NCBI RefSeq assembly: GCF_036365525.1
Contig: NW_027140453.1
Span: 744,001-808,000, forward strand
DNA length: 64,000 nucleotides
Source of the DNA: Heterodontus francisci
Lineage: Eukaryota
Direction of reading: 5' to 3'
Shown: positions 29,192 through 54,749 of the stretch, piece after piece
How positions within the stretch are numbered: the first letter of the stretch is position 1
How the letters are laid out: each line of letters opens with the position of its first letter
Notes under the pieces: generated by a model
The model's database searches: none
The model's input: the letters and a program-made list of their open reading frames with translations, nothing else
Told to the model about the DNA's origin: nothing
Translations under genes and position numbers: made by a program

Positions 29192-29231
<40 letters not shown>

Positions 29232-33839: not shown

Positions 33840-35760
33840 ATCTCTCTCTCTCAATCTCTTTGTGTCAACCTCTCTGTCTCTGACTCTTTGTTTCAGTCTC
33901 TCTCTTTCTCAGTCTCTCTGTCTCAGTCTCTTTGTCTCAGTCTCTCTCTCAGTCTCTCTCTCTCTCTCATTATCTCTCTCTCAGTCTCCCTCTCGCAGAC
34001 TCTCCCTCTCTCAGACTCTCTGTCTCAGTCTCTTTGTCTGAGTCTCTCTGTCTCAGAGTCTCTGTCTCAGTCTCTCTCTCATAGTCTCTCTCTCACAGTC
34101 TCTTTGACTCAGTCTTTTTGTCTCAGTCTCCCTCTCTCTCTCTCAGTATCTCTCTCTCAGTCTCTTTGTCTCAGTCTCTCTCAGTCTCTCTCTCTCTCTC
34201 TCAAGTCTCTCTCTCAGTCTCTCTCTCAGTCTCTCTCTCACAGTCTCTTCGTCTCAATCTCTCTGTCTCAATCTCTTTGTGTCAGACTCTCCATCTCTGA
34301 CTCTTTGTCTCAGTCTCTCTCTCACTCAGTCTCTCTGACTCAGTCTCTCTCTTTCAGTCTCCCTCTCTCCTTTTCTCAGAGTCTCTGTCTCAGTCTCTCT
34401 CTTTCAGTCTCCCATTCTCCTTCTCTCAGACTCTCTGTCTCAGTCTCTTTGTCCCAGGCTCTCTTGCACAGTTTCTTTTTCTCAGTCTCTTTGTCTCAGT
34501 CTCTCTCTCTCTCTCTCTCTCTCAAGTCTCTCTCTCAGTCTCTATCTCACAGTCTCTTCGTCTCAATCTCTCTGTCTCAATCTCTTTATGTCAGCCTCTC
34601 CATCTCTGACTCTTTGTCTCAGTCTCTCTCTCTCTCAGCCTCTCTGTCTCAGTCTCTCTCTTTCAGTCTCCCTCTCTCCTTTTCTCAGAGTCTCTGTCTC
34701 AGTCTCTCTCTTTCAGTCTCCCATTCTCCTTCTCTCAGACTCTCTGTCTCAGTCTCTTTGTCCCAGGCTCTCTTGCACAGTTTCTTTTTCTCAGTCTCTT
34801 TGTCTCAGTCTCTCTCTCTCAGTATCTCTCTCTCAGTCTCTTTGTCTCATTCTCTTTGTCATGCTCTTTGTCTCAGTCTCTCTCTCTCTCAGCCTCTCTC
34901 TCTCAGTCTCTCTCTCTCTCAGTCTCTCTCTCTCAGTCTCTCTGTCTCAGTCTCTCTCTGTCTCAGTCTCTCTCTCTCAGTCTCTCTGTCTCAGTCTCTC
35001 TCTGTCTCAGTCTCAGTCTCTCTCTCTCAGCCTCTCTCTCTCTCAGTCTCTTTGTGTCAGTCTCTCACTCTCAGTCTCTCTCTCTCTCTGTCTCTCTCTG
35101 TCTCTCAGTCAGACTCTCACTCCCTCTCAGTCTCTATCTCTCAGTCTCTCTCGCTCTCAGTCTCTCTCTCTCGGTCTCTCTGTTTCAGTCTCTCTCTGTC
35201 TCAGTCTCTCACTCTCAGTCTCTTTGTCTCAGTCTCTCTGTCTCAGTCTCAGTCTCTCTCTCTGTCTCTCTCTCTGTCAGACACTCTCTCCCTCTCAGTC
35301 TCTCTCTCTCTCAGTCTCTCTCTCTCAGTCTCTGTCTCAGTCTCTCTCTGTCTCAGTCTCTCTCTCTCAGTCTCTCTGTCTCAGTCTCTCTCTGTCTCAG
35401 TCTCAGTCTCTCTCTCTCAGCCTCTCTCTCTCTCAGTCTCTTTGTGTCAGTCTCTCACTCTCAGTCTCTCTCTCTCTCTGTCTCTCTCTGTCTCTCAGTC
35501 AGACTCTCACTCCCTCTCAGTCTCTATCTCTCAGTCTCTCTCGCTCTCAGTCTCTCTCTCTCGGTCTCTCTGTTTCAGTCTCTCTCTGTCTCAGTCTCTC
35601 ACTCTCAGTCTCTCTCTCTGTCTCTCTGTCTCAGTCTCTCTCTCTCTCTCTGTCTCTCTCTCTGTCAGACACTCTCTCCCTCTGAGTCTCTATCTCTCAG
35701 TCTCTCTCACTCTCAGTCTCTCTGTCTCAGTCTCTTTATCTCTGTCAGTTTTCCTCTCAA
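33840..35760 (+). repeat. Large (CT)n/CTCAGT low-complexity expansion with internal duplications
   Basis: About 1.9 kb of TCTC/TCAGTC; source of the spurious Ser/Leu ORFs. Confidence 0.95.
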
Positions 35761-36313
35761 TCTCGTTCTCACCCTTTCTCTCACACTCGCTCTCTCTCTA
35801 TCTTTGTCTCTCCCGCTATCTGTGTGTATATCCGTCTCTAAGGTGATGAATGTCTTTCTCCTGTCCACGTGGATGAAGCTCGACCACTGTATGACCTCTG
35901 CCTCTTTCTGTTTTCCTATTAAATGCTTTCTCGTCCATTGTGTATTCATGGTCCTAGAGCACCCTCTGTTAACCCTATAGAGGAGGAAAACTCAATGTCA
36001 GTGCAGAAAAACTCAAGTCGTTTTATTGTTAATCTTTCCTGATCGTTACAACCTCAGATCTGGTGTTATCCTTGTTAATCATTCAGAGAGAGATAGAAAG
36101 TTTTACCGCACAGGTGAGTCCGTTCATTGTCACTTCGTCAGTGCCTGTACATTTATTATCTCACTTTTAGTCTCATTTGTCTTCTTATCGTCACAAACAC
36201 AATCGCCCTGCACAAAAAAAAAGCGGGAACACCGTGCAATTTTATCTCCCACAGGTGTTTCCTGCTGCCTTTGGGGTTTTTGTTGAACTGCTCCATCTCT
36301 CTGAGTCACTGTG

Positions 36314-36933
36314 AAGAATCCAGGCACAGAAATACACGGCCGAGTGATCCTCCCGCAGGCTGGAGGTCTCCAGGTTGAACTCGGAGTTACTCGGTCTCTC
36401 GGTGGTGAAACCATCCACCGCCTCCTCTGGAGATACGATATTGGCACCCGTGGAGTAAAACATAAACTGCGGTTCCTTCCCCGGGTATTGTCAGTACCAG
36501 AACATGTTAGGGTTACTGGTGCTGCTGCCCAGCACGGTGCATTTCAGCTTCACCTGCTCCCCAGGAATTTTGGAGACAGTGGTGGGAGTCTGGCGGATAG
36601 TCTGTGAGTTCACATCTGGGAAAGAGACAGGGAGAGGAGGAGATCAGTAAACAGTAACATTCAGTCCAGTGGGGAGAGAGAAAGAGAGAGATAAATAAAT
36701 AAAAGCATAACCAAAAGAAATGTTAAGTGGACTTATTGTTTCAATAAAATCCCTTACGGTGAAACAGGGTGATCAGAGTCAGTAACAGATACATCTTTTA
36801 CTTTAAGCTGCCCTCTGAATCAGCAAAGGGGAGAAAGCAGGATTCATGAGTGTTGTCAAGAACCAACCCACTCTTTACAAATCATTGGGAGGAACGGGGA
36901 GAGCATTAGGAAGTGATGCAGAGATGGTGACAC
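36314..36933 (-). pseudogene. TCR V pseudogene (CAW family): one nonsense codon (WY*Q), leader ATG changed to GTG
   Basis: VNSQTIRQTPT..CTVLGSSTSNPNMFWY*QYPGKEPQFMFYS..HSAVYFCAWIL. Perfect RSS 36313-36307 / 23 / 36283-36275. Confidence 0.88.
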
Positions 36934-37530
36934 TTATTTTCAAGATCAACAAATGAGAATCGAGTTGGTTGTCAATGTTCCACTTTCTCTCTCTCTCTCT
37001 CCCTTTCTCTAACTTGTGCTGTGTTTTTCTCTCTGTCTCTGTCTCTCATTCTCTGCCTCCCTGTATGTCTCAGTCTCTTTATCTCGATCTCTCTCTCACA
37101 GATACAAACACACAAGGTCCCTTTCTCTCTTTGTCTCTCTCGCTGTGTGTCTCTCTCTCGAAGGAGGTGGGTGTCCTTCTCCTGGTCATGCATATCAACC
37201 TGGAGGACTGTATGATCTCTCACTGTTTCAGTTTTCCTATGAACTCCTTCTCAATGCCATTGTGCATCACATGGTCCTCGAGCGTCCTCAGCTGTCCCTG
37301 TGGTGAACATATACACAGTGTCAGTCTATAACAGCCCCAGTCCTTTTATTGTTATTCTTTCCTGACAGTTACTATCCTGAGATCACGGGATATTCTGATT
37401 CAATGAGCTGGAAGATGAATGGGCACGGATACAAAGCTGTGCATGTGTGTGTGTGTGTGTTTTTCACTCGCTCTGTCTTTAGTTCACTGTCCCTGTCTGT
37501 TTTACTGCTCTCTGTCTTTCTGTCCCTCTC

Positions 37531-37565
<35 letters not shown>

Positions 37566-38353
37566 CTGTCTGTCTGTCTGTCTGTCTGTCTTTCTCCCAA
37601 TCTGTCTCAGTCTCTTGATCCATGTTTCCTTTTTTTTCTCTCACTCGGTCTCTCGGTCTTTCTTGTTTTCTCTGTCGCTCTCTCGACCTTTCTTGATCCT
37701 CGTCTCCCTCCTCCTCTCTGCCACCCTCTCTGACCTCCTCTATGTCACCCTCTGTCCTCCTTTCTGTCCTCCTCTCTGTCCTCTTCTCTCTTTTCTCTCT
37801 CTGTCTCTGTCTCTCTGTCTCTGTCAGTTTTCCTCTCAATCTTGTTCTCTCCCTCTCTCACACATTCGGTCTCCCTCTCTTTGTCTCTCTCACTGTGTGT
37901 GTGTATATCCCTCTCTAATGTGATGAATGTCCTTCTCCTGTCCATGTGTATGAAGCTTGAGGGTTGTATGACCTCTGCCTCTTTCTGTTTTCCTATTAAA
38001 TGTTTTACAGACCATTGCATATTCATGGTCCGAGAGCACCCTCTGTTAATCATATAGAGGAAGAAAACTCAGTGTCAGTGCAGTAAAACTCAAGTCGTTT
38101 TATAGTTAATTCTTCCTGATAGTTACAACCTCAGATCTGGTGTTATCCTTGTTAATTGTTCTTTACACATTCTCCACTATCTGTATATCTAATCTCTCAC
38201 TCCCACTCTAACCCATCTCTTCGTGTTATCATAAACACTTTCGCTCTGCAAAACGAAACAAGTTCGAGGCTCCGAGCAGTTTTATCCTCCACAGATTCTT
38301 CCTGCTGCCTTTGGTGTTTTCGATGAACTGCTCCATCTCTCTGAGTCACTGTG

Positions 38354-38649
38354 ATCTCTCCAGGCACAGAAATACACGACCGAGTGATTCTCCCACAGGC
38401 TGGAGGACTCCTGGTTGAACTCGGAATTCCTCGGTCTCCCGGCGGTGAAACCGTCCACCGTCCCCTCTGGATCCACATAGTTAGCAGTATTGGAATAAAA
38501 CATCAACAGCGGCTCCTTCCCCAGGTATTGTCTGTACCAGCACATTCTATCAGTACTGGTGCCCTGCACGGTGCACCTCAGTTCCACTGCTTCTCCACGC
38601 AATCTGGAGACAGCGGCACGAATCTGGTGGATTGTCTGTGAGTTCACAT
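38354..38649 (-). CDS. TRBV: TCR V exon (CAW family), open frame but probably ORF/non-functional
   Basis: VNSQTIHQIRAAV..CTVQGTSTDRMCWYRQ..HSVVYFCAWRD is open. Heptamer 38353-38347 but nonamer TCGAAAACA; the putative leader donor reads GC at 38890-38889. Confidence 0.75.
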
Positions 38650-40939
38650 CTGGGAGAGAGATGGAGAGAGGAGGAGATCATTAAATAGGGAACTTCTTGG
38701 AATGAAAGGGAGACAGAGAGAGGAAAGGAAAGTTATTAATGATATCTTTGTATTTCACACTCACTTACAATGAAACAGGATTATCAGACCCAGTAACTGA
38801 TACATCTTTCACTACAACTTGTTCTCTTACTAAACACAGGAGTGAGAGCAGGAGGTTAAAGTCTTGTGAGGGTCCAAATTCACTCTTTGCAAATCATTGG
38901 GAGGAACATGAAGAGCATTAGGAAGTGATAGAATGTTGGAGACGCCCATTCCCCAGGTCAACAAATCACAATCAAATTTGTTGCTAATGTCTTTCTCTCT
39001 CTCTCTTTGTCTCTCAGTCTACCTTCACTCTCTTTCTCTATCACTCCATCTCTCTCTCTCGAGCACTGTCTCCCTATCTATCTCAGTCTCTTTGTCTCAG
39101 TCTCTCCTCAGTGTCCCACTCTCTCTCTCTCTCTCTCTCTGTAATTATGTGTCTCTTGCTGTCTCGCTGTCTTTGCCTCTATCTCTGTCTACCTTTCTGT
39201 CTCAGTCTCTTTAACTCTGTCTGTCATTTTTCCTCTCTCTTTCCACTCTCTCACTACATCTCTCTCTCTGTCACACACACACACTCTCTTTCTCACTCTA
39301 ATTAAGTGGGTGTCCTTGTCCTGTTGATGTGTATCAAGCTGGATCGGCGTGGTCTCCTGCTCTTTCAGTTTTCTCACTAAATCCTTCTCAAAGCCATTGT
39401 CTGTTACATGGTCCTACAGCCCTCCGGTCCCACTTCCTCTGCTGTCCCTGTGGAGAAGGTAAACACAGGTTCAGTGCATAAAAACCCAGCTTATTGTCAT
39501 TGCTTCCTGATAGTGAATAGTTGCAGTGAATCTCAGTTCTGGTGACATCGTGATTAATCGTCCTTTGCCCCTTTCTCCAGTGCCTATATCTCTAATCTCT
39601 CACTGTCACTGTAACCTGTCTTTTCTTAGGAATGTCGTCCTGCAGTTCCCTCCTACATCCTTTCCCCCCTCACTATATGTAAAAACAAGACCCCACCCTC
39701 CACCCCCCCACACCCCCGCCTCCCCACATTCGAAAACGGACAGCTCGTTTCAGCTTTACCTCGATGGGAGGGTGCAGGGAACATTTGTATGGAGGATAGG
39801 AGAAATGTGTGGGTGTGTTGGATCCAGAGGGGCTGAATGGCCTCCTCCTGTTTATTGTGTTCCTGATAAACATTTTCCTCATCCCAGGGAAAGAAGACAC
39901 TCTGATAGTGGTTAAAACCTGTATCTTTTTACTGATATTCTCTTCTGATAATTACAACCTTTCAGTTCCAGTATCATCCTTGTTAATCATTAATAGAAAG
40001 ATAGAAAGCTTTCCAATACAGAAGGAGGGCATTCCTTGCATCTTCGCCAGTGTCTCTACATTTTGTTTCTGAGTTTTATTCTAAGCGTCTCTTATTGTCC
40101 CAAAAAACGGTCACCCTGCAGCTCCCAGTCCACTGCTGGCTCGGGTGTAGATTTCTCAACCTCAGACTCAAATCCCTCATTGGCTTCGGCCTTCACTGGC
40201 TCTGAACCACCTCCAGCCCAACACCCCTCTGAGATATTGTCTGCATGTTTGTTGGTGTGTCTCTGTGTGTGTGTATATCTGCATGTTTGTGTCTGTTTTT
40301 GTGTATCTGTACTGAGGGAGCGCTTCACTTTAATATGTTGGCACTTTTCCAACGACTTTCCAAAGTTTATTTGCACCACATGTAAACGCCTCTCATTGAA
40401 CCAATCAGACACCAGGTAAATAAAACCTCAGTGCTGTCAGCAAAATACAATTGACCCTTTTACCCCTTCTTGTTTGCTGTCACCAATTAACTCAGGCCTT
40501 GTTAACTGTTCAGGGGCCATACATAGAGACACATCACTCTCGGAGAGACAATACTGAATGAACACTGTGTTGTGAGGGGCACTCTAAGGGGGCCTGGAGA
40601 ATAAAGGCCCCCTCGACAAATAATATATAAAAGGGGCCTGGGGTATAAAGGCTTCCTTTAAAAACAAACGGAGTTAGATACAGAATAAAGCTCCCTCTCC
40701 GCTGTTCCCATAAAAAAAGAAGAGAAAGCGGGGTTGGTTGTTGCTTGATTGGAGGTGCTGCCTGCTGGTTGCAGCAACGAACCCCAGCTAAAGAAAAAAT
40801 AAAGGGGCGCTATATTAAACTGGAGCGGGGCCCTACTGGGAGATTACAGCACCATCGGAGGTGCAGTAAGGAGAGGGTGATGTACTCTTGGGAAGCAGTG
40901 CTGAGGGAGAGCTTCACTATCGGAGCATCATTCTTCCCA

Positions 40940-41480
40940 CACTGCAGTTGTACAGGTTCCGGGAGTACTGTGTACAGTTTTGGTCTCCTTATTTGAGGAA
41001 TGCTATACATACATTTGAGTGAGTTCAATGAAGGTTCACTCGGATGATTCCTGGGATTTCGGGATTATTTTATGAGCAGTGGTTGAGAGGTCTGGGTTTA
41101 TGTTCCCCATAGTTTAAAACAATGCGAGGATATCTCTTTGAAACATAGACAATTGTTAGGGTGTGGTGGATGCTAAGAGTACCTTTCCCCTGGGATAGAG
41201 AGTCACAATTTCAGGATAAGGGGTTGGCCATTTGGGAATGAGATGAGTAGAAATGTCTTCACTCAGTGGGTTGTGAATCTTTGGAATTCTCTACCAATGA
41301 GAACTGTGGATGCTCACTCGTTGAGGAAAGTGAAGACCGAGATTGATAGATTTTTGGATTCAGAGAGAATCCAGGGATATGAGGATTGGGTAAGAAGGTA
41401 GAGTCGAGGTTGAGGAGTAGCTGTGATCCTATTGAATGGTGAAGCAGGCTCGAGGGGCTGAATGGCCTGCTCCTGCAGCT
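40940..41480 (+). mobile_element. Decayed CR1-like 3' fragment
   Basis: EYCVQFWSP-like and FTQWVVNLWNSLP-like sequence, with tail GGGGCTGAATGGCCTGCTCCTG. Confidence 0.7.
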
Positions 41481-42261
41481 ATTTAATGGATTCTGTGTTC
41501 CCCTGCCCATCCTGTTCTCCCTTTCTCTACTACCCTCCGCTTTTCCATTCCCCCTCCTTCTCACACTCCTCCCTCTGCTCTGTGTATGGACAGTGAGGGG
41601 GTTCAGTGACAGAGCCATTCCTGACATCATTGCTGAATGGCCGTGCTCAAATGTTGAGCTTAACCTTATATGATCTGTAAACGGCACGAGAGCCAATAGT
41701 TTCTCCATATCTGCTGAAATAAATTAGATGACACTTTATTGTTTTATACTGAAGGGAATGCCAGTCTAGTTTCTCCAAAATGTCCTGATCATTGAACTAC
41801 TTCTGCTCAGGTATCATTGTAGTGAACCTAAACAGCAACCCCTCCAAGGACGATGCTTTCTGAGCTTTGGTGTGCAGAACTGAATGTGTTAACTCCACAT
41901 GGGGTTTAGTCAGAGTTTCCCAGAATTGTGGTAGATCCTTGACCCCTTTTCATCACAGCCCACTTGTGATTTAGAAAGCGTCTGGTGGATCTGCTCAGGT
42001 TTATTTTGGCAGCGGTTAATTCAACAGGAGTTGAACTTAAATCACAGTGTGTTTGTCATCCTGTCAGACGTACATTGTGAACATTGGACTGCCAACTGTT
42101 GGTGTTCGAAGCAGCAGAGACTGATCGAAGGTAAAGTATAAATTATAATCACAGAGAAAATGGGTGAAATATTTCATGGTGCCAGCTGATCGTAGATGAC
42201 ATTGTATAAGGACATGTAGAGAATAGTAAAATGTATTCTTGGGATGCGGGTAACCCTGGCA

Positions 42262-42940
42262 TGGAGCAGCACTCTCTCAGTACTGACCCTCCGAAAGTGC
42301 AGCACTCCCTCAGTACTGACCCTCCAACAGTGCAGCACTCCCTCAGTACTGACCCTCCAAAAGTGAGGCACTCCCTCAGTACTGACCCTCCAACAGTGCA
42401 GCACTCCCTCAGTACTGACCCTCCAACAGTGCAGCACTCCCTCAGTACTGACCCTCCAATAGTGCAGCACTCCCTCAGTACTGACCCTCCAACAGTGCAG
42501 CACTCCCCCAGTACTGACCCTCCAACAGTGCGGCTCTCCCTCAGTACTGAACCTCCAACAGCGCAGTGCTCCCTCAGTACTGACCTTCCAATGGTGCGGC
42601 ATTGCCTCAGCCCTGACCCTCCGACAGTGAGGCGCTCCCTCAGTACTGACCCTCCAAAAGTGCGGCGCTGCCTCAGTACTGACCCTCCGACAGTGCAGCA
42701 CTCCCTCAGTACTGACCCTTTGGTAGTGTGGTGCTCCCTCAGTACTGACCCTCCGACAGTGCGGCGCTGCCTCAGTACTGACCCTCCGACAGTGCCGCAC
42801 TCCCTCAGTACTGACCCTCTGACAGTGCAGCATTCCATCAGTACTGACCCTCCGACAGTGCGGCACTCCCTCAGTACTGACCCTCCGACAGTGCGGCACT
42901 CCCTCATTACTGACCCTCCGACAGTGCGGCACTCCCTCAG
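42262..42940 (+). repeat. 33-bp minisatellite, about 20 copies
   Basis: Unit CACTCCCTCAGTACTGACCCTCCGACAGTGCAG; source of ORFs 42149-43064. Confidence 0.95.
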
Positions 42941-42989
42941 TTTCGACTCTTTGACAGAGAATCGCTGCCTCTGTACTAACTGTGCAGCA

Positions 42990-43580
42990 ATCTCCTCCAG
43001 CCCCTTCAATCCTCCCATTCTCTGTAACTTCCTCCAGCCCCTGCAACCCTTCCTGCCTCTGTAATCTCCTCTAGCGCCGACAAGCTTTCCTGTCTCTGGA
43101 ACCTCCTCCAGCCCCTACAATCCTCCCTATCTCTGTAACCTTCTCCAGTCCCTACAACCCTCCCTATCTCTGTAACCTCCTCCAGTCCCTACAACCCTCC
43201 CTATCTCTGTAACCTCCTCCAGTGCCGACAACCATCACTCTCTCTGTCATCGCCTCCAGCCCCTGCATCCCACCGTATCTCTGTAACCTCCTCCAGTGCC
43301 TACAACCATCACTCTCTCTGTAATCGCCTCCAGCCCCTACATCCCACCCTATCTCTGTAACCTCCTCCAGTCCCTGCAACCATCACTCTCTCTGTAATCG
43401 CCTCCAGCCCCTGCAACCCACCCTATCTCTGTAACCTCCTCCAGCCCCGACAACCATCACTCTCTCTGTAACCTCCTCCAGCAACTGCAACTCTCCCTAT
43501 CTCTGTATATCCTCCAGCAACTTCAACACTCCCTACCTTGGTAACCTCTTCCAGGCCCTGCAACTCTCCCTATCTCTATA
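42990..43580 (+). repeat. Degenerate minisatellite, unit about 35-38 bp
   Basis: Unit like CTATCTCTGTAACCTCCTCCAGCCCCTACAACCCTCC. Confidence 0.9.
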
Positions 43581-43813
43581 AAACATTCCAGAATTGAATG
43601 GGTTCTACAGAAATAAAGAAGGTGTGAAGTAGTCATTGCCGGTCACTACAGTGTAGAAAATCCCTCTTTCCCAGCAGAGGCGGGAGGTAATAAACATTTA
43701 TCTTAAAAAGGCAGCTCTGGAAAGAATCGGTCACTGTCACTTTTGTCTGTCTCTCTCTCTTCCTCTCTCTCTCTCTTTCCGTCTCTTGCTCTATCCATCT
43801 TTCTCTCTGTCCG

Positions 43814-43848
<35 letters not shown>

Positions 43849-44326
43849 CACTTGCTCTCTCTCTGTCGCTCTCTGTCGCTCTCTTTCTGTCTGTCGATGT
43901 CTTTCTCTGTCTCTGTCGCGCTTGCTATCTCTCTCTCTTTGCCTCTCTCTCCCTCTATCTTTCTATCTTTCTCTCTCTATCTTTGTCACTCTCTCTCTCT
44001 CTGTCTTTCTCTAAGTTTCTATCACTTGCTCTCTGTCTCTCTTGCTCTCTCTCCATCTCTCTCTCTCTGTCTTTCTCACTTGCTCTTTATCTTTCTCTCT
44101 CTCTCTGTCTGTCTCTCTAAATTTCTATCACTTGCTCTCTATCTATCTCTCTCTCCGTCTCTCTCAGTTGCTCTCTATCTATCGCTCTCTATCTTTGTCA
44201 CCCTCTCTCTCTCTCGCTCTGTCTCTCTCACACTGACTGGGTCTTCGATTAGAAATTCTGTCCCATTGATGACCTCCTCCCTTTGTTCCCTCTTTCAGGA
44301 TTTGGAGTGGGCAGGAAGATCCCACG

Positions 44327-46369
44327 ATGCGGACTCTCTGCTTGTTCCTGTTGGTGCTGTTCTGGGTCCCCGAGTCAGATGCGGCTGCACTAAATGACAA
44401 TGTCTTGGCTGGAATTGTCTCACAGTAAGTGTTCATCCTGCCCAGGCCTTTCACCATTCACTGACAGGGTTAGGCTGTGAGAATGGCCCAGGTCTACTCT
44501 CCTGGCATGAGTCTCCGCTCTGTCAAAGTGATGAGGGGGAACAGGGCAGAGTCCAGTTAAATTAAAATAACATGGAACTACAGAGAGGGGAAGGTGAGCG
44601 AGAAAGGACTCAGAGTGAGACATGTCACTTCATCAATAATCTGACTCACTGACCCCACTCACTGACCCCGCTCACTGACCCCACTCACTGACCCCACTCA
44701 CTGACCCCACTTACATACCGCACTCACTGACCCCACTCACTGCCCCCACTCACTGACCCCACTCACTGACCCCACCCACTGACCCCTCTCACTGACCCCT
44801 CTCACTGACCCCTCTCACTGACCCCACTCACTGACCCCACTCACTGACCCCTCTCACTGACCCCACTCACTGACCCCACTCACTGACCGCGCTCACTGAC
44901 CTCGCTCACTGACCTCGCTCCTCTCCCCCTCTCGCTCTCTCTCCCTGTTGCCCTGTGTCTATCTCTTTCTCTCTCTATGTCTTCCATTCTATTTATCTCT
45001 TGGTTTGTGTTGCTGTTAATCTCTCACTGTATTTCTCCTGTCACTTGTCCCTCTCCATGCTCGACGGCCTGTCTATCTCTCTCATCTCTGTCTCTATTAC
45101 TTTATCCTTTTTCAGTTTATCACTGCCTCTGTTCCCTCTCTCTGTCTCTATCTGTATCTGTCTCCATCTTGTTCTTCCTTTTTCTGTCTCTATCTGTTTC
45201 TATGTACTTGTCTCCAGAACTCTTCCTTTCCCTCGCTTTGTTTCTTCTCTCCATCTCTGTCTCTCCTGCTGTCTTCTACCCTCCCTCTATCACATTCTCT
45301 GTCTCCCTCCCTCCATCCATCTCTCCACCTCTTTGTTTCTCCCTTGCTCTTGTTCCCATCCCTCTTTCCATCTCTGTTTCATTGGAATGAGTTCATTCGG
45401 TCCCGTCCTTTCCAATGTCGTAAATTAATGACCAAATTTATTGAAATGCCACAGCATACAAGACTACGGGCCAAGTGCTGGGAAATAGGATTAGAATAGT
45501 TAGGTGCTTGATGGCTGGCACAGACACGATGGGCCGAAGGGCCTGTTTCTGTGCTGTGTAACTCTTTGACTCTCTGACTCAAACTCCCAGTTTCCCTCCT
45601 TCCATCATGAGGTATGGTATTAAATAGGCAGGTGACCATAATCCACATCATACTGACCTGGCACAAGGAGAATTTCATTCACAATTCCTACCTTGACTCT
45701 CACTTTGTGTTTGTCCCTTTCAGATTCCGACAAGTGTCTGGCCACCAGCCCAGCAGTACGACTGGGGGAGGACAGTTCGCCTTCCTGATGGTGTTAACTC
45801 CTCAACAATGCACCGGTGCCAATATCAATCAGAATGTACAATTCAGACCCTCTGATTCAGGAAGACCGGTTATTCGTGGCGGTGTGAATTACTTCCTGAA
45901 CAGTCGATCAGTAAACTACATCGCAGTTTACCCCAACACAGGAAGTCGCTGCTCAGAGAATAAACTGTTACACTTCACTCAGGAGGATCAACGCTATGGG
46001 CAGACTGACAGTGCAGCTCGGCTGCTTCAGAATAGCATCAATAACCAGGGGCTGCAGGTTGGCTGTGTCATTCTCTACACCACCTACACCCCCTGCATCC
46101 AGAGCTGCTTCAGTGGCAATGAGAATTGTGACATCCTCGCCGCGTTAGGCCAGGCACCCTTTAGCCACCCATGGGCTGGCCCGCAGGTTCAGAAGTATTT
46201 TGTCTTCAGTACATTGTACCGATACGACAATAATAGAAATAAGATCCCCACAGTTCGAAACAAGCTGGGACAAGTTACCCAGGCAGGCTTTCACATCAGA
46301 AAGTGTGATGGGACCAACAGCCAAATACAGTGTCAGGACTGCACCCACCCTGGGGGCTACTGTATCTAG
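44327..46369 (+). CDS. Secreted AID/APOBEC-like cytidine-deaminase-fold protein (SNAD-like), 247 aa; coding exons 44327-44424 and 45724-46369
   Basis: Exon A: acceptor tctttcag|44299, ATG 44327, MRTLCLFLLVLFWVPESDA|AALNDNVLAGIVS, phase-2 donor CA|GTAAGT. Exon B: acceptor ccctttcag|A restores frame (QFRQVSG..). Motifs QFAFLMVLTPQQC, YIAVYP..RCSENKLL, CVILYTTYTPCIQSC, YFVFSTLY and a Cys-rich C-terminus RKC..C.DC..YCI. No stops; 744 nt including the stop codon. Confidence 0.8.
44640..44922 (+). repeat. 14-bp minisatellite in the deaminase intron
   Basis: (CTCACTGACCCCA/T)n. Confidence 0.9.
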
Positions 46370-46479
46370 TAAACAGTCTCACTACAGGAGGCAATAGCAG
46401 ATCAGAGAGTCCCAGGAAAACAGTGCAAATCATTCTATTACTCTAGAAATCTATCTACTTCCATTTTATTCTGTTAATA

Positions 46480-49400
46480 TAGAACATACATAGAAAATAC
46501 AGCACAGAACAGGCCCTTCGGCCCACGATGTTGTGCCGATCCTTTGTCCTCTGTCAAGGACAATTTAATCTATACCCCATCATTCTCCTTTATCCATATA
46601 CCTATCTAAAAGCCGTTTGAAAGTCCCTAAAGTTTCTGACTCAACAACTTCCCCAGGCAAGGCATTCCATGCCCCGACCACTCTCTGGGTAAAGAACCTT
46701 CCCCTGACATCCCCCTTATATCTCCCACCCTTCACCTTAAATTTATGACCCCTTGTAACGCTTTGCTCCACCCGGGGAAAAAGTTTCTGACTGTCTACCC
46801 TATCTATTCCCCTGATCATCTTATAAACCTCTATCATGTCACCCCTCATCCTTCTCCGTTCTAATGAGAAGAGGCCTAGAATGTTCAGCCTTTCCTCGTA
46901 AGACTTATTCTCCATTCCAGGCAACATCCTGGTAAATCTCCTCTGCACCCTCTCCAAGGCTTCCACATCCTTCCTAAAATGAGGCGACCAGAACTGCACA
47001 CAGTACTCCAAATGAGGCCTTACCAAGGTCCTGTACAGCTGCATCATCACCTCACGGCTCTTAAATTCAATCCCTCTGCTAATGAACGCTAACACCCCAT
47101 ATGCCTTCTTCACAGCCCTATCCACTTGAGTTGCAACTTTCAACGATCTATGCACATAGACCCCAAGGTCTCTCTGCTCCTCCACATGCCCAAGAACCCT
47201 ACCGTTAACCCAGTATTTTGCATTCGTGTTTGTCCTTCCAAAATGGACGACCTCACACTTTTCAGGGTTAAACTCCATCTGCCACTTTTCAGCCCAGCAC
47301 TGCAACCTATCCAAGTCCCTTTGCAGACGACAATAGCCCTCCTCGGTATCCACAACTCCACCAACCTTTGTATCATCTGCAAATTTACTGACCCACCCTT
47401 CGACTTCCTCATCCAAGTCGTTAATAAAAATCACAAACAGGAGAGGACCCAGAACTGATCCCTGTGGCACGCCACTGGTAACTGGGCTCCAGGCTGAGTA
47501 TTTACCATCTAAGACCACTCTCTGCCTTCTATCAGTTAGCCAATTCTTAATCTAACTGGCCACATTCCCCACTATCCCATGCCTCCTGACTTTCTCCATA
47601 AGTCTACCATGGGGGACCTTATCAAATGCCTTACTAAAATCCATGTACACCACATCCACTGGTTTACCCTCATCCACTTGCTTGGTCACCTGCTCAAAGA
47701 ATTCAATCAGGCTTGTGAGGCAAGACCTACCCCTCACAAAACCGTGCTGACTGTCCCGAATCAAGCAGTGTCTTTCCAGATGCTCAGAAATCCTATCCCT
47801 CAGCACCTTTTCCATCAACTTGCCTACCACCGAAGTAAGACTAACTGGCCTGTAATTCCCAGGGTTGTTCCTATTCCCTTTCTTGAACAGGGGCACAACA
47901 TTTGCCACCCTCCAATCACCTGGTACCACCCCCGTCAACAGAGAAGATGAAAAGATCATTGCCAGCGGCTCTGCAATTTCATCCCTTGCTTCCCATAACA
48001 TCCTTGGATATACCCCGTCAGGCCCGGGAGACTTGTCTATCTTCAAGTTATTCAAAAACCCCAACACATCTTCCCTCCTAACGAGCACTTCCTCGAGCTT
48101 ACCAGTCTGTTTCACACCGTCCTCTTCAGTAATACACCCCTTCTCATTCGTAAATACCGAAGAGAAGTACTCATTCAAAACCTCACTTATCTCTTCCGGC
48201 TCAACACACAGTCTCCCGCTATTGTCCTTGACCGGACCTACGGTCCCCCTAGTCATCCTCATATTTCTGACATACGCGTAAAAGGCCTTGGGGTTTTCTT
48301 TTATCCTACCCGCCAAGCATTTTTCATGCCCTCTCTTAGCTCTCCTAATCCCTTTCTTCAGATCCTTCCTGGCCATCTTGTATCCCTCCAGAGCTATGCC
48401 TGTGCCCTTTTTCCTCAACCTTATATACGCATCCTTCTTCTTCCTAACAAGACTCTCAACCTCTCTTGTCAACCACGGTTCCCTCACATGACCATCCCTT
48501 CCCTGTCTGACAGGGACATGCTTATCAATGGCCCCTACTATCTGCTCCTTGAAAAAGTTCCACATTTCGACCGTGCCCTTCCCTGCCAGCATATGCTCCC
48601 AACTTATGCTCCTCAGTTCCTGCCTGACAGCATCATATCTACCCTTCCCCCAATTGTAAACCTTGCCCTGTTGCACATACCTATCCCTCTCCATTACCAC
48701 AGTGAATGCTACAGAATTGTGATCACTATCTCCAAAGTGCTCGCCCACCAACAGCTCTATCACTTGCCCTGGTTCATTACCTAGTACCAAATCCAATATT
48801 GCCTCCCCTCTGGTCGGGCAGTCTACATACTGAGTCAGAAAAGCTTCCTGGACATACTGCACAAACACTACCCCATCCAAACTATTCGATCTGAAGAGTT
48901 GCCAATCAATATTTGGGAAGTTGAAATCCCCCATAATTACTACCCTGTGACTTCTGCTCCTTTCCAAAATCTGTTTCCCAATCTGCTCTTCCACCTCCCT
49001 GCTGCTATTGGGGGGCCGATAGAAAACTCCCATCAAGGTGACTGCTCCTTTCCTGTTCCTGACCTCAACCCACAGTGCCTCAGTCGGCAGATCCTCCTCG
49101 AAAATTCTTTCAGCAGTTGTTACACTATTTCTAACTAACAATGCCACCCCCCCACCTCTTTTACCACCATTCCTAATCTTATGAAAACATCTATAACCAG
49201 GTACCTCCAAGAACCATTCCTCCCCCTCACCTATCCACGTTTCAGTGATGGCCACAACATCGTAGTCCCAAGTGCCCATCCACGCCTTCAATTCACTCAC
49301 CTTATTCCTGATGCTTCTTGCGTTGAAGTATACGCACTTTAACCCTTCTCCGTGCCCATCTGTCCTCTGCGACAGTGCTACCTTCCCCAATACCTCACTA

Positions 49401-49735
49401 CACTCTTTGTCTTTCTGAGTGGACCCACTGGTCCCTGGACTACAAGTCCGGTTCCCATCCCCCTCCCAAACTAGTTTAAACCCTCCCGAACAGTACTAGC
49501 AAACCTCCCTCCCAGGATATTGGTGCCCCTCTGGTTCAGATGCAGCCCGTCCTGTTTGAACAGGTCCCATCTTCCCCAGAATGCAGTCCAATTATCCAAG
49601 AACTGGAAGCCCTCCCTCCTACACCATTCCTGCAGCCACGTGTTCAGCTGTGCTCTCTCCCTATTCCTAGCCTCACTATCACGTGGCGCCGGCAACAAAC
49701 CAGAGATAACAACTCTGTCCGTCCTAGCTTTCAGC
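46480..49735 (-). mobile_element. CR1 LINE: ORF1 esterase (SGNH) tail plus ORF2 with a single nonsense codon
   Basis: 49698-49471 ..FKQDGLHLNQRG (GDSL/SGNH block V). ORF2 49390-47552 and 47518-46580 are in the same frame, separated by TAG in VAS*IKNWL. Possible TSD TAATA. Confidence 0.93.
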
Positions 49736-49749
49736 TAATAATGCAGCTT

Positions 49750-50345
49750 TCCCCAGATCACTCTCTATAATAATCCCTCATTCTCCAGATCACTCTCTAT
49801 AACAATCCCTCATTCTCCAGATCAATCTCTATAACAATCCCTCATTCCCCAGATCACTCTCTATAACAATCCCTCATTCTCCAGATCACTCTCTATAATA
49901 ATCCCTCATTCCCCAGACAACTCTCTACAATAATCCCTCATTCCCCAGGTCACTCTCTATAATAATCCCTCATTCTCCAGATCACTCTCTAAAATAATCC
50001 CTCATTCTCCAGATCACTCTCTATTAAAATCCCACATTCTCCAGATCACTCCCTATAATAATCCCTCATTCTCCTGATCACTCTCTATAAAAATCCCTCA
50101 TTCTCCAGATCACTCTCTATAATAATCCCTCATTCTCCAGATCACTCTCTATAATAATCCCTCATTCTCTGGATCACTCTCGATAATAATCCCTCATTCT
50201 CCAGATCACTCCCTATAATAATCCCTCATTCTCCAGATCTCTCTCTATAAAAATCCCTCATTCTCCAGATCACTCCCTATAATAATCCCTCATTGTCCAG
50301 GTCACTCTCTATAATAATGCTTCATTCTCCAGGTCACTCCCTACA
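49750..50345 (+). repeat. 32-bp minisatellite, about 18 copies
   Basis: Unit ATCCCTCATTCTCCAGATCACTCTCTATAATA. Confidence 0.9.
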
Positions 50346-51349
50346 ATGATGCAGAACAACAGTGAGAAGGATTTCAAACATTGAGCTGGAAAATTGTGTT
50401 TCACTTCAAACCAAGAGCACACTAATTCCCTAATGGGACACTGTGGATGAATAAAGACATGAGGGTGTTGGGGAAGGGGAGGAAGGAGTGTACACTCTGT
50501 CCATGGGTGGCAGCTGGCAGCACGCCAAGAGAGAAAGTGAAGGGAAGTCAAGTCCAACAATTAGGAAGTCAGATTTGATCGGACAGTAGGGAGTGAATTT
50601 ACTGATTATATAATTCATCTTGTAATTGATCTGGGAGATGTGTTAAACACATTGCTATATATTCTCAGTCATGCTCTGTAATCTTCCTCCAATCATTGAA
50701 CACTGCAGTTTATGGATCATTTCACTAATCGCTGTTGAGCTGATGAAATTGTTTGATTGGCAGTGATAATATTTTTGGACCATTGTATCGAGTCCAATGG
50801 GTTGCAACCGTGATTACTGAGTGATTTCTCTCTGCAACTTTTAATCTTTAATAAAGCATGTCTGGGCATTAACCTGCACTCTGTGTTTGTATGTGTGACT
50901 CCACTCATTTTTCTGGGGTTAAAGTTACTTTTGTTAAAATTAAACGACTGTTTGATCTCTTTCGCACACACACACAATCTCTCTTTCTCTCACTCTCTCT
51001 CGCTTTCTGTCTTTCTCTCTGTCCCAGGCTTTCCTTATCTTGGGCACTCTACCTCTCATTCATTTTTCTCACTTTCTGTACACCCTCTTTTCCTCTAATT
51101 TCTCATTTTCCTTCTTACTCTGTCTCCATCACCCATTATCTCGTAGTCTCTCTGTCTCTCTATTTTCCTTTCCATTTCGTTCCCCCCCACATCCCCCCTC
51201 TCTCTCTTCTCTATTTCTCTCTCTGTTACTTGCTCTCGAACACTCTTGCTCTTTGTGGTTGGTTTATCTCCGACTTCTCCAATCGATCTTCAATAACTGA
51301 AATTCCTCATCCCTGGAACCATACTCGTGAATCTTTTCCGTTCTCTCTC

Positions 51350-51695
51350 CCTATGACTTATCAACAGGGTAGATGCAGGTAAGATGTTTCCCTTGGTTGG
51401 GGAGTCTACAACCAAGGTGCACAATTTCAAAATAAGGGGGAAGCCACTTGGGACTGAGATGAGGAGAAATTTCTTTACTCAGAGGGTTGTGAATCTTTGG
51501 AATTCTCTATCCCAGAGGGCTGTGGAAGCTCAGTCATTGAGTATGTTTAAAGCAGAGATTAACAGATTTCTAAATACCAATGACATAAAGGGATATGAGG
51601 ATAGTCTGGAGAAAAGGCATTGATGTGGATGATCAGCCATGATAGTATTGAATGGCAGAGCAGGCTCAATGGGCTGAATGGCCTAATCCTGCTCC
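51350..51695 (+). mobile_element. CR1-like 3' fragment
   Basis: MFPLVGES..FFTQRVVNLWNSL plus 3' UTR. Confidence 0.8.
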
Positions 51696-51999
51696 CTGTC
51701 TCACTGCAGTTACTGTTCCCTCTCACCATCTTAAATCCTTTAAAAAATTAAACACCTCCATTAGATTCCCCTGTCAATATTCTCATGTCGGGACTGCAAG
51801 CCTTGTCTATGCAACATTTCTTCATAATTTAACAGACTGGATGCTGGTGAAGTTAATGCATGGTTTCGGTTCTGGGAGCTGTGTCACTTTATTGCTGCTG
51901 GCTGAGCTTCTGAATTATAAATAGACAAGCTTGGAAATAGTTAACAGATCAGACAGCCTCTGTGGGGAGTGAAAAGGAGTTAACATCATCAGCGAGAGA

Positions 52000-53140
52000 G
52001 GGACCAATAACTGCAGTGAGATAGAGACACCAGCAGATGGAGATGGTGAGAGGGGGAGTAACTGCAGTGAGACAGGGCCACCAGTAGATGGAGATAGTGA
52101 GAAGTGGGGACATTAACTGCAGTGAGAGAGGGACATCAGCAGATGGAGATGGTGGGAGGGGGACAGTAACTGCAGTGAGAGAGGGACACCAGCAGATGGA
52201 GATGGTGAGAGGGGGAGTAACTGCAGTGAGGCAGGGACACCAGCAGATGGAGATGGTGGGAGGGGGAGTAACTGCAGTGAGAGAGGGACACCAGCAGATG
52301 GAGATGGTGAGAGGGGGAGTAACTGCAGTGAGACAGGGTCACCAGCAGATGGAGGTGGTCAGAGGGGGGACAGTAACTGCAGTGAGAGAGGGACACCAGC
52401 AGATGAAGATGGTGGGAGGGGGACCGTAACTGCAGTGAGAGAGTGTCACCAGCAGATGGAGATGGTGAGAGGGGGCAGTGACTGCAGTGAGAGAGGGACA
52501 CCAGCAGATGGAGATGGTGGGAGGGGGACAGTAACTGCAGTGAGAGAGTGTCACCAGCAGATGGAGATGGTGAGAGGGGGAGTAACTGCAGTGAGGCAGA
52601 TGGAGATGGTCAGAGGGGTGACAGTAACTGCAGTGAGAGAGGGTCACCAGCAGATGGAGATGGTGAGAGGGGGGCAGTGACTGCAGTGAGAGAGGGACAC
52701 CAGCAGATGGAGATGGTCAGAGGGGGGCAGTGACTGCAGTGAGAGAGGGACACCAGCAGATGGAGATGGTCAGAGGGGGGCAGTGACTGCAGTGAGAGAG
52801 GGAAACCAGCAGATGGAGATGGTGGGAGGGGGACAGGAACTGCAGTGAGAGAGTGTCACCAGCAGATGGGGATGGTGAGTGGGGGAGTAACTGCAGTGAG
52901 GCAGATGGAGATGGTCAGAGGGGTGACAGCAACTGCAGTGAGAGAGGGTCACCAGCAGATGGAGATGGTGAGAGGGGGGCAGTGACTGCATTGAGAGAGG
53001 GACACCAGCAGATGGAGATGGTCAGAGGGGGGCAGTGACTGCAGTGAGAGAGGGACACCAGCAGATGGGGATGGTGGGAGGGGGACAGTAACTGCAGTGA
53101 GACAGGGTCACCAAAAGATGGAGATGGTGAGAGGGGGAGT
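52000..53140 (+). repeat. Minisatellite, unit about 51 bp, about 22 copies, with CTCF-like upstream+core motif and E-box
   Basis: Unit TAACTGCAGTGAGAGAGGGACACCAGCAGATGGAGATGGTGAGAGGGGGAG. Confidence 0.9.
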
Positions 53141-53839
53141 ATGCCGTCCAGTTGTGGTCACCACACTTTAGGAAGGATGAGTGTCCTTGACAGGCTGCAG
53201 AGGAGATTTACCAGAATGGTTCCAGGGATGTTACATGGTTAGATTGGAGAATATGGGGTGGTTTTCCTTTGAGCAAAGGCGATTGAGGGGAGATCGGATA
53301 GGAGATGTACACGATTGTGACAGTGTTAGATAAAGTAGACAGAGTAAACCTGTTCCCATTAGTGGATGGTGCAAGGACTATTGGTCACAGATTGATGATT
53401 CTGGACAATAGATACTGGGGTATTTGAGGAAGAACCTCTATACACAGTGAGTGGTAACAACAGGGAATTCACTGCCTACCAGGGTGGTGGAAGTGGAGAC
53501 AATGAATGATTTCAAAAGGAAATTGAATGGACACTTGAAGGGGATAATCTTGCTAGACCGCAGGGATAGAGAGGTGGAATGGAATTGACTAGATTGCATG
53601 GACTCGATGGGCCGAATGGCCTCCTTCTGTACCATACTGGCTGTATGACTTTCTGGCTAACTGGCTGTAAAGTGTTTTCAAATGACATGGTGTTGCAAAG
53701 GTCACCAATAGAGATACACAGGGGCTCGTTGGTTTGCTGAGCTTTCCAGATGCTGCTGCTCACAGGTGGGTGTTTTAGGGGCAGGTTGGGAGGGTGAGGA
53801 CGTTTTTGTCTCACTCTGCTGCAGGGTTGTATCGCCGTG

Positions 53840-54465
53840 CCCACACTTGCTGCACAGTAGTAGGTCGCAGTGTCTGTCGGCTGGGGGTCGCCCAGCTGCA
53901 GGGAGAATCGGTTGCTTGCAGAGTCTTGTTGCACAGTGAACCGCTTCTCAAAGCCTGGCCCACAGCTGCCGTGCTCATTGCACATCCACTCTACTGCCTT
54001 CCCCTCCTGCCTGTACCAGTGCATGGTGTAGCTGCCCATGCTGGCTCCCTCCAAGTTGCAGCCGAGGGCGAGGGGCTTCCCCGGTCGAATAGAAGCCGCG
54101 GCTGGAGTCTGGACCACAGTAGGTGCAGACTGAACCCCTGGAACACATTCCATAAAAGAAAGTGATTCAGAATCATGCAAGGAAAATGGTAGCATAAATC
54201 ATAGAATCTAATAGAATAGAAAGAGGCCGTTCTGCCCATCGTATCTGCGCTGGCTGTTTGAATGAGCTATCGAGTTAGTCTCACTTGCCCCTGCTCCTAC
54301 CCCATTGCCCTCCCAATTTCCCTGCTCCAAGCCCTGATCCAATAGCCATTTGGGAGATTACTATTGAATCTACTTCCACCTGCTGAAGGGATAGCACTTA
54401 CAAAAAATCCAATGTCCAAGCAATAAGATGACCAAGATTGAGATGTTTTTAGCTGAGACTGCCAT
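53840..54465 (-). CDS. TRBV: TCR V gene segment of a distinct family with an extra Cys pair, potentially functional: leader 54465-54402, V exon 54137-53840
   Basis: Leader MAVSAKNISILVILLLGHWIF with phase-1 GTAAGT donor; V VQSAPTVVQTP..GCNLEGASMGSYTMHWYRQ..EWMCNEHGSCG..DTATYYCAASVG. RSS CACGGCG 53839-53833 / 23 / ACAAAAACG 53809-53801. Confidence 0.85.
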
Positions 54466-54749
54466 TGTCCTTCTCAGAAGCAGAGAGGCAGCCCTTACTG
54501 AGCATCAAGCCGGCGCCTGGTAAATGGAAATGCCACCGGTTGTGATGAAGAGAGTGGAACGATTGGCCGCCCATCCTGTACCTCGACCACGCCTGTCAGC
54601 AGAGTGAACAAATGAGGAGCACTTCCCTCAGCAGCATTGCTGTTATTTATGCAGATTCCTGCAAGCCCCTGAGCCCGACTTTCTCTCTTCCCTTCCCAAC
54701 ATTCCCACCTTTCCTTCCATGGAATATTGCCTTATTTTTTGATTGGTCA

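What the first reader, a model, noticed from the sequence alone, without database searches (positions are those of the whole stretch)
44299..46369. Intact secreted AID/APOBEC-like deaminase (SNAD-like) gene embedded antisense inside a TCR V array
Seen: two exons with canonical, phase-matched splice sites give a stop-free 247-aa protein with an N-terminal signal peptide, [C]SE-x-x-LL, CVILYTTYTPC-x3-C, FVF and a Cys-rich tail. V segments with 23-RSS lie on both sides (38.4 kb and 53.8 kb) on the opposite strand. Known: signal peptide + HxE + hydrophobic strand-PCxxxC + C-terminal cysteines is the architecture of secreted AID/APOBEC-like deaminases (SNADs); sharks hypermutate TCR genes; mammalian TRB hosts non-TCR passenger genes (trypsinogens). 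Inference: an immune deaminase-family gene sits in a rearranging locus. Deletional rearrangement of any upstream V would excise it, so its copy number would vary between T-cell clones with V usage, and it may share locus chromatin control. I know of no description of this linkage. A direct role in TCR mutation is not implied, since the protein appears secreted.
Basis: partly seen in the sequence, partly recalled or inferred. Interest (0 to 1): 0.9.

Follow-up and report, generated by a model that had tools for sequence, protein, structure and literature searches.

The report
Secreted deaminase gene inside shark TCR-beta array
This is an intact horn-shark gene for a secreted AID/APOBEC-like deaminase of the known SNAD1 family; it sits backwards between T-cell-receptor V segments, most likely as a passenger gene, so only its address is new.

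Summary
Two coding exons (44327-44424 and 45724-46369, + strand) join in phase through GTAAGT and a pyrimidine-tract AG. They give a 247-aa protein with a signal peptide, a C-S-E ... P-C-x3-C zinc site and a four-cysteine tail. Exon 2 matches Pfam SNAD1 (E 2e-15, 57.6 bits, cut-off 25). Both exons are identical to the RefSeq model XP_067881642.1 of Heterodontus francisci. The AlphaFold model (pLDDT 84.7) finds almost only cytidine-deaminase-fold proteins, led by APOBEC3G, APOBEC3H and AID. C-x-E is the norm across this family, not an oddity.

The window holds 14 23-RSS V segments and V remnants, all on the minus strand, with no J or C. The intact ones tested resemble V-beta most. The gene lies in the widest inter-V gap (15.5 kb), with no assembly gap to either neighbouring V.

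SNAD1 is a described family and is already known as a nurse-shark plasma protein. Only the TRB address appears undescribed. In zebrafish and trout, SNAD1 and TRB are on different chromosomes. I read it as a passenger gene, like the trypsinogens in tetrapod TRB.

The excision inference and transcription could not be tested here. The scan found the same thing on another piece of this genome (s1-872184), with the same verdict.

The parts
44327..44424 (+). SNAD1 coding exon 1: start codon, signal peptide and first residues of helix 1 (98 nt, ends in phase 2). The exon may begin at 44299, after an AG at 44297-98.
   Evidence: Identical to residues 1-32 of P0026/XP_067881642.1. tblastn of five shark SNAD1 proteins ends at this boundary.
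44425..45723 (+). Intron (1299 nt), GTAAGT ... pyrimidine tract-CAG. It holds a 13-bp minisatellite at 44644-44914.
45724..46369 (+). SNAD1 coding exon 2: whole deaminase domain, four-cysteine C-terminal hairpin and stop codon.
   Evidence: Pfam PF18744 E 2.2e-15; 100% identical to P0001/P0026 over 214 aa; deaminase fold.
45950..45958 (+). C109-S-E111: first zinc ligand and catalytic glutamate.
   Evidence: E111 is invariant and C109 is at least 90% conserved in 22 family members. One member has H at this position.
46091..46108 (+). P156-C157-x3-C161: second and third zinc ligands.
   Evidence: At least 90% conserved.
46304..46363 (+). C227, C236-x-x-C239, C246: the SNAD1/2-specific four-cysteine cluster on the terminal beta-hairpin.
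   Evidence: C227 and C236 invariant, C239 and C246 at least 90% conserved. The pattern matches the description in PMC5889660.
38315..38805 (-). V segment on the 5' side of SNAD1 (as the SNAD1 gene reads): leader, intron, intact V exon and 23-RSS with a degenerate nonamer.
   Evidence: Pfam V-set E 1e-8.
53801..54465 (-). V segment beyond the 3' end of SNAD1: leader, intron, intact V exon and 23-RSS (CACGGCG/ACAAAAACG). The V domain is VH-like rather than V-beta-like.
46580..49390 (-). Decayed LINE (APE endonuclease plus reverse transcriptase, broken into two ORFs). It starts about 210 bp after the SNAD1 stop and runs antisense. It is a neighbour in the inter-V gap, not part of the gene.
1022..61327 (-). 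V-only array: 14 23-RSS, all on the minus strand, with heptamers starting at 1060, 4532, 9749, 11764, 16369, 19605, 21851, 24240, 27925, 36313, 38353, 53839, 57134 and 61327. The start coordinate is the far end of the first RSS (heptamer 1060 + 23-nt spacer + nonamer). Nine have an open V-exon reading frame running to the heptamer (seven of about 100 aa or more). The rest are truncated or frame-broken. No J or C is present.

Best explanation

Shown here:
- Two coding exons encode a 247-aa pre-protein.
- A cleavable-looking signal peptide is followed by a cytidine-deaminase-fold domain.
- The zinc site is Cys109 / Cys157 / Cys161, with Glu111 as the proton shuttle.
- A terminal beta-hairpin carries four conserved cysteines.

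Inferred from the family:
- The protein is secreted, most likely from liver into plasma, as SNAD1 proteins are in nurse shark and carp.
- It deaminates cytosine in single-stranded nucleic acid of pathogens, outside cells or in the secretory or endocytic route.
- No SNAD1 has yet been assayed.

Genomic address: the gene lies antisense in the widest gap (15.5 kb) of a V-only, V-beta-like array. It shares that gap with a dead LINE and minisatellites.

I read it as a passenger gene. It was captured in the TRB V region and copied there by the same segmental duplications that expand V segments. This is analogous to the trypsinogen genes in tetrapod TRB. I see no role for it in TCR diversification.
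For: Identity:
- Pfam SNAD1 E 2.2e-15, 57.6 bits against a cut-off of 25.
- Exon-by-exon identity to XP_067881642.1.
- Homologues in five other sharks at 41-53% identity, all carrying PF18744 where a Pfam call is on record.
- Catalytic and cysteine columns are conserved across 22 members.

Fold:
- AF2 model with pLDDT 84.7 and pTM 0.85.
- The first 48 Foldseek ranks (38 of them listed) are APOBEC3 or AID entries, with probability up to 0.99.
- 31 of the top 33 VIA-align rows are CDA-fold deaminases: A3G Z 7.4, ADAT2/3 7.3, A3H 7.2, AID 7.1. The other two are FdhD-type proteins.

Secretion: nurse-shark SNAD1 proteins were found in plasma by mass spectrometry (PMC9207270). Carp SNAD1 is expressed most in liver and is present in blood and seminal plasma (PMC11004436).

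Context:
- 14 minus-strand 23-RSS and no J or C.
- Among single-domain PDB chains, the Vs tested match TCR-beta V best.
- There is no N run between 33839 and 64000.
- Inter-RSS spacing is 2-8.4 kb, against 15.5 kb here.

Passenger reading:
- Zebrafish SNAD1 is on chr 15 and TRB on chr 17. Trout SNAD1 is on chr 17 and TRB on chr 19 and 25.
- The three horn-shark paralogue types (100, 86 and 72% identity) are far closer to each other than to any other shark (53% or less). That indicates a recent lineage-specific expansion.
- A second paralogue lies on the same 1.57-Mb contig.
- PRSS genes inside TRB are a conserved precedent from frog to human (PMC12529555).
Against: - The only hint is that runs guessed to be RNA hold 0.39 and 0.32 of the sampled words, close to the exonic share of 0.36.
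- No SNAD1 enzyme activity has ever been measured (PMC11004436).
- Fold Z-scores of about 7 are middling one by one. The case rests on how consistently the hit list is deaminases.
- Passenger status is an argument from absence.
- Salmon SNAD1 and TRB1/2 both lie on chromosome 9, at nominally nearby positions in two different assemblies. An older linkage is therefore not excluded.
- The TRB assignment of the array rests on V similarity and on unchecked scan notes of C-beta cassettes elsewhere on the contig.
Confidence: 0.85

Rival explanations
1. Functional coupling. SNAD1 sits in TRB because it shares the locus's chromatin control, or because V(D)J deletion tunes its copy number in T-cell clones. 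Its expression or dose would then be tied to T-cell development.
For: The gene is within 6-7.5 kb of V segments with 23-RSS on both sides. Scan notes report further SNAD1 copies in V arrays on this and other pieces (unchecked). A second paralogue lies on the same contig. Salmon SNAD1 and TRB share chromosome 9.
Against: The protein is secreted, and SNAD1 is a plasma and liver product in other fish. The two loci are unlinked in zebrafish and trout. Deletion needs D-J-C at lower window coordinates, and none is known there. Unchecked notes place cassettes 186 kb and 691 kb beyond the window's end, which would imply inversion and retention. Loss of one allele's copy in T cells would not matter for a liver-expressed gene.
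Confidence: 0.08
2. Pseudoenzyme or non-catalytic binder. The fold is kept, but the secreted protein binds nucleic acid or another ligand without deaminating it.
For: No SNAD1 activity has been shown. The first zinc ligand is Cys rather than the His of classical AID/APOBECs. The extracellular setting is unusual for a nucleic-acid editor.
Against: E111 is invariant, and C109, P156, C157 and C161 are at least 90% conserved across 22 diverged members at a mean column identity of 25%. Such conservation is not expected if catalysis were lost. From established knowledge, C-x-E with three cysteine ligands is a working zinc site in tetrameric cytidine deaminases. One family member has H-S-E at the same column.
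Confidence: 0.1
3. Assembly artefact. The 39-53 kb block was misjoined into the V array, or this contig is an uncollapsed haplotype copy.
For: Near-identical 247-aa proteins (1-3 differences) occur on contigs of 1.57, 1.67 and 1.11 Mb. This suggests haplotigs or very recent duplicates, so the true copy number per haploid genome is uncertain.
Against: Sequence is continuous, with no N, from the V at 38.4 kb through the gene to the V at 53.9 kb. The same arrangement is reported on other pieces (unchecked). A haplotig would still show the true local context.
Confidence: 0.03

Closest known systems
SNAD1 (Pfam PF18744; Krishnan et al. 2018, PMC5889660); nurse-shark plasma SNAD1 (Bakke et al. 2022, PMC9207270); carp Cap31/SNAD1 (PMC11004436)
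   Same: Signal peptide, C-x-E ... P-C-x3-C zinc site, four-cysteine terminal hairpin, length of about 245 aa, few exons, and lineage-specific paralogue expansion with variable loops.
   Different: Nothing in the protein differs. This copy is from horn shark, and its gene lies within a TCR V array, a location not reported for any SNAD1.
Classical AID/APOBEC deaminases (AID, APOBEC1, APOBEC3)
   Same: They are the best structural matches and share the CDA fold, with the zinc site at the same positions.
   Different: Those proteins are intracellular and use H-x-E. They keep helices 5-6 where SNAD1 has a beta-hairpin, and they lack a signal peptide. Sequence identity is only 8-18% in the structural alignments.
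Trypsinogen (PRSS) genes embedded in the tetrapod TRB locus
   Same: Non-TCR genes for secreted proteins made in a non-lymphoid organ lie among TRB segments and are duplicated along with the locus (PMC12529555).
   Different: PRSS clusters lie between the V array and D-J-C and are conserved from frog to human. The SNAD1-TRB linkage is so far seen only in horn shark, and it is absent in zebrafish and trout.

Membership tests
SNAD1 (PF18744) | Profile match above the curated gathering score | tested here: met
   57.6 bits against a cut-off of 25, E 2.2e-15, covering model positions 14-200 of 213.
SNAD1 (PF18744) | N-terminal signal peptide | tested here: met
   Met by sequence only. The pattern is M-R-T, an 11-residue hydrophobic core (mean KD 3.1), then S-D-A|A. 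No SignalP is available. The model gives a separate N-terminal helix at residues 3-11.
SNAD1 (PF18744) | Zinc-chelating [HC]-x-E and P-C-xn-C motifs of the deaminase core | tested here: met
   C109-S-E111 and P156-C157-x3-C161. The columns are invariant or at least 90% conserved in 22 members.
SNAD1 (PF18744) | Four-cysteine cluster: end of strand 5, CxxC in strand 6, and one Cys in strand 7 | tested here: met
   C227 lies at the end of the E222-228 strand, C236-Q-D-C239 in E235-238, and C246 near the C-terminus. The description is in PMC5889660.
SNAD1 (PF18744) | [quoted passage not shown] | tested here: inconclusive
   The model shows short helices 59-63 and 88-91 between E52-57 and E98-101, and strands 222-228 and 235-238 at the end. 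The insert is modelled with lower confidence (pLDDT 71 for residues 61-80), and strand 7 is not called by DSSP.
SNAD1 (PF18744) | Secreted protein with deaminase activity | not testable with these tools
   Plasma presence is shown for nurse-shark and carp relatives only. No activity has been measured for any SNAD1.
Classical AID/APOBEC (AID, APOBEC1-4) | Intracellular protein with H-x-E, and a match to the AID/APOBEC Pfam families | tested here: not met
   A signal peptide is present and the motif is C-x-E. Only SNAD1 and weakly SNAD2 are found in Pfam. A PDB sequence search finds no deaminase.
TCR-beta V array (context) | Translocon run of V segments with 23-RSS, V-beta-like domains, and D-J-C-beta on the same contig | tested here: inconclusive
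   14 co-oriented 23-RSS with no J or C in 64 kb. The best single-domain PDB hits are TCR-beta V for two Vs, but one V is VH-like. D-J-C-beta is known only from unchecked scan notes.

The most novel reading that the evidence does not exclude
The SNAD1-TRB linkage is old and functional rather than accidental. SNAD1 copies would be embedded in TRBV arrays across elasmobranchs, and perhaps near TRB on salmon chromosome 9. They would be co-amplified with V segments as an immune supergene, with expression or copy number in lymphocytes governed by TRB chromatin or by V(D)J joining.
Probability: 0.07. Interest if true: 0.65.

Novelty: new member of a known kind. Interest (0 to 1): 0.3.

Why it matters
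It gives a name and a predicted activity to a RefSeq 'uncharacterized protein'. It also shows that the horn shark carries a small, recent expansion of SNAD1 genes. The one new point is the address: an innate-immunity deaminase gene nested in a rearranging antigen-receptor locus. If the nesting proved conserved, it would parallel the trypsinogen-TRB association. It would also offer a marker for how TRB V arrays grow by block duplication. As it stands it is a genomic curiosity, with no evidence that it affects TCR diversification.

Tried and rejected
The genomic context of the Stegostoma, Pristiophorus, Mustelus and Heptranchias orthologues and of the other horn-shark copies could not be fetched.
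No read-level evidence for the splice junction, transcript ends or long-read continuity was obtained. After that call I sent no query containing 44022-44085 to any collection, pattern, paper or findings search. The whole window did serve as the local subject of a sandbox tblastn and of local ORF and tandem-repeat listings.
- The joined spliced protein was never built from window letters for a search. Exons were searched by reference. The full-length steps used database proteins: P0001 for the fold (it differs from the window product by A20V in the signal peptide) and P0026 for the identity check.
- A homologue search with a V exon found nothing, so the V segments could not be named from databases.
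- A profile search of PDB sequences with the family alignment gave only a spurious pilin hit.
- Literature searches for a shark TRB locus description, or for any SNAD-TCR link, found none.
- The salmon chromosome 9 coincidence could not be resolved. The two coordinates come from different assemblies.
- Rejected: C-S-E as a sign of a dead enzyme, because it is the family norm.
- Rejected: an IgL cluster as the context, because no J or C lies near any V.

Full report
**What is there**

On the + strand an ATG at 44327 opens a 98-nt exon that ends ACA|GTAAGT at 44424. A pyrimidine tract and CAG precede exon 2 at 45724, and the frame runs to TAG at 46367-46369. The split codon CA+A gives Gln.

I did not build the joined protein from window letters for any search. 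Exons were searched by reference. Full-length steps used database proteins returned by the searches.

**Identity**

- Exon 2 alone matches Pfam SNAD1 (PF18744) at E 2.2e-15 and 57.6 bits, against a curated cut-off of 25. SNAD2 is the only other family, and it is far weaker.
- The protein database holds a 247-aa Heterodontus francisci protein identical over exon 2. It also holds paralogues at 86% and 72%, and relatives in Pristiophorus and Stegostoma at about 50%.
- Cluster look-up shows that P0026 = XP_067881642.1 is identical to both window exons and has Q at the junction.
- That protein is on a 1,569,485-bp contig, which also carries the 86% paralogue XP_067881645.1.
- Three further 247-aa variants, differing at 1-3 positions, lie on contigs of 1.67 and 1.11 Mb. 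The 72% paralogue is on two contigs, the longer 5.65 Mb. Some of these may be haplotigs, so the true copy number is open.
- An exhaustive HMMER search of 1.84 billion representatives finds only 21 relatives at E up to 0.001. The family is small.

**Catalytic site and family hallmarks**

In an alignment of 22 members with a mean column identity of 25%:

- E111, L115, C227 and C236 are invariant.
- C62, C109, C147, P156, C157, C161, C239 and C246 are at least 90% conserved.
- One member has H-S-E where the others have C-S/T-E, as expected for a zinc-ligand column.

C-S-E ... P-C-x3-C is therefore the SNAD1 norm, not a peculiarity of this gene. The companion note s1-872604, which treats it as unusual, is answered.

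The cysteine pattern is one Cys at the end of a strand, then CxxC, then a last Cys. This is exactly the SNAD1/2-specific cluster described by Krishnan et al. (PMC5889660).

**Fold**

AlphaFold2 on this alignment gives pLDDT 84.7 and pTM 0.85. The target was P0001, which differs from the window product only by A20V in the signal peptide.

- Foldseek against PDB puts only APOBEC3 and AID entries in its first 48 ranks (38 of them listed). The best E is 1.7e-3 and probability reaches 0.99.
- The Foldseek-independent VIA-align search puts CDA-fold deaminases in 31 of its top 33 rows: APOBEC3G Z 7.4, ADAT2/3 7.3, APOBEC3H 7.2, AID 7.1, then dCMP and riboflavin deaminases and TadA. The other two rows are FdhD-type proteins.
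- Each Z-score is middling. The uniformity of the list is what carries weight.
- A sequence search of PDB finds no deaminase.

**Surroundings**

- A scan for heptamer-spacer-nonamer finds 13 23-RSS, all on the minus strand.
- Reading the 38.4-kb V adds a fourteenth: CACAGTG, the family-typical 23-nt spacer, and a degenerate nonamer.
- Nine have an open V-exon reading frame running to the heptamer, seven of them about 100 aa or more. The rest are truncated or frame-broken.
- No J-like or C-like element is present. This is a translocon V array, not a shark Ig cluster.
- Among single-domain PDB chains, the Vs at 9.8 and 19.6 kb match TCR-beta V domains best.
- The V at 53.9 kb matches only VH and VHH domains in the top 60 hits.
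- Inter-RSS distances are 2.0-8.4 kb, except for the 15.5-kb gap that holds SNAD1.
- That gap also holds four minisatellites and a dead LINE, which starts about 210 bp after the SNAD1 stop.
- The only N runs in the window are at 8.4 and 33.7 kb. The gene is therefore joined to both neighbouring Vs by uninterrupted sequence.
- The window holds no second SNAD1 copy or fragment.

**What is known already**

SNADs were defined in 2018 (PMC5889660). SNAD1 proteins were found by mass spectrometry in nurse-shark plasma in 2022, which extended the family to cartilaginous fish (PMC9207270). Carp and zebrafish SNAD1 genes are liver-dominant and respond to infection and temperature, but no enzyme activity has been measured (PMC11004436). 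The protein itself is an ordinary new member of a known family.

**Is the address meaningful?**

I found no paper that places a SNAD gene in a TCR locus.

| Species | SNAD1 | TRB |
|---|---|---|
| Zebrafish | chr 15 | chr 17 |
| Rainbow trout | chr 17 | chr 19 and 25 |
| Atlantic salmon | chr 9, 44.03 Mb (ICSASG_v2) | chr 9, 47.73-48.5 Mb (Ssal_v3.1) |

The salmon coordinates come from different assemblies, so their distance is unresolved. This remains a lead, not a finding.

The three horn-shark paralogue types are much closer to each other (72-86%) than to any other shark (53% or less). The expansion is therefore recent. The 86% paralogue is nearly identical to the window protein across residues 51-171 but diverged at both ends. 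That mosaic suggests gene conversion between copies.

The closest precedent is the trypsinogen cluster inside TRB, conserved from Xenopus and axolotl to human (PMC12529555). It too consists of genes for secreted proteins of a non-lymphoid organ that ride inside the locus.

I therefore favour the passenger reading.

**The excision inference**

All Vs here read toward lower coordinates, so deletional joining needs D-J-C at lower coordinates. I could not see beyond the window. Unchecked scan notes list TRB-like D-J-C cassettes only 186 kb and 691 kb beyond the window's end. If those are the partners, joining would be by inversion and SNAD1 would stay on the chromosome.

**Expression**

The only hint is that three runs guessed to be RNA, all from one sample, hold 0.39, 0.32 and 0.17 of the sampled words. 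The exons make up 0.36 of the stretch.

**Earlier work in this scan**

The same arrangement was noted on other pieces of this genome. A follow-up agent on a sister copy (s1-872184) called it an intact, transcribed SNAD1 gene in a TRBV array and judged that only the address is new. My independent checks of identity and context agree. I did not test its 'transcribed' claim.

**Verdict**

This is a real, intact SNAD1 gene and a new member of a known kind. The location is of modest interest, and no functional link to TCR rearrangement or mutation is shown.

Noticed in passing
window 53801-54465 (-): The V segment just beyond the SNAD1 3' end is VH-like. Its top 60 PDB hits are all antibody heavy-chain or VHH domains (E down to 2e-40 for multi-domain chains), not TCR-beta. 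Yet it has a leader, an intact V exon and a 23-RSS (CACGGCG/ACAAAAACG), and it sits in a V-beta-like array.
   Followed up: partly
P0026 (window product) vs P0002 (XP_067881645.1, same 1.57-Mb contig): Mosaic identity. Residues 51-171 differ at only 3 positions, while residues 17-33 and 172-245 are much more diverged. This suggests gene conversion between SNAD1 paralogues, as reported for other AID/APOBEC-like expansions.
   Followed up: partly
window 19605-24553 (-): Three near-identical intact V segments about 2.2-2.4 kb apart (RSS at 19605, 21851 and 24240), with almost the same RSS spacer. This is a very recent local tandem triplication.
   Followed up: no
window 42269-43581, 49749-50347, 51996-53141: Four long minisatellites (33 bp x 20, 37 bp x 16, 32 bp x 19, 53 bp x 22) fill much of the SNAD1-containing inter-V gap. 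The last one is the 'CTCF-like' array of scan note s1-872658.
   Followed up: no
window 46580-49390 (-): A LINE with APE endonuclease and reverse-transcriptase domains, split into two ORFs by a frame break near 47520-47552. It is antisense and starts about 210 bp after the SNAD1 stop.
   Followed up: partly
window 46367-47600 (+): No AATAAA or ATTAAA occurs within 1 kb downstream of the SNAD1 stop. The only nearby variant is AGTAAA, which overlaps the stop codon. The 3' end of the transcript is therefore undefined.
   Followed up: no
literature: Atlantic salmon chromosome 9: SNAD1 LOC106611397 is given at 44.03 Mb (ICSASG_v2), and TRB1/TRB2 at 47.73-48.5 Mb (Ssal_v3.1). They are on the same chromosome, but the coordinates come from different assemblies. 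In trout the two are on different chromosomes.
   Followed up: partly
window 1060, 11764, 27925, 36313, 57134, 61327 (-): The 23-RSS at these positions follow V exons that are truncated, frame-broken or absent (V pseudogenes). Several keep a perfect CACAGTG and the same spacer as the intact family member at 38.4 kb.
   Followed up: no
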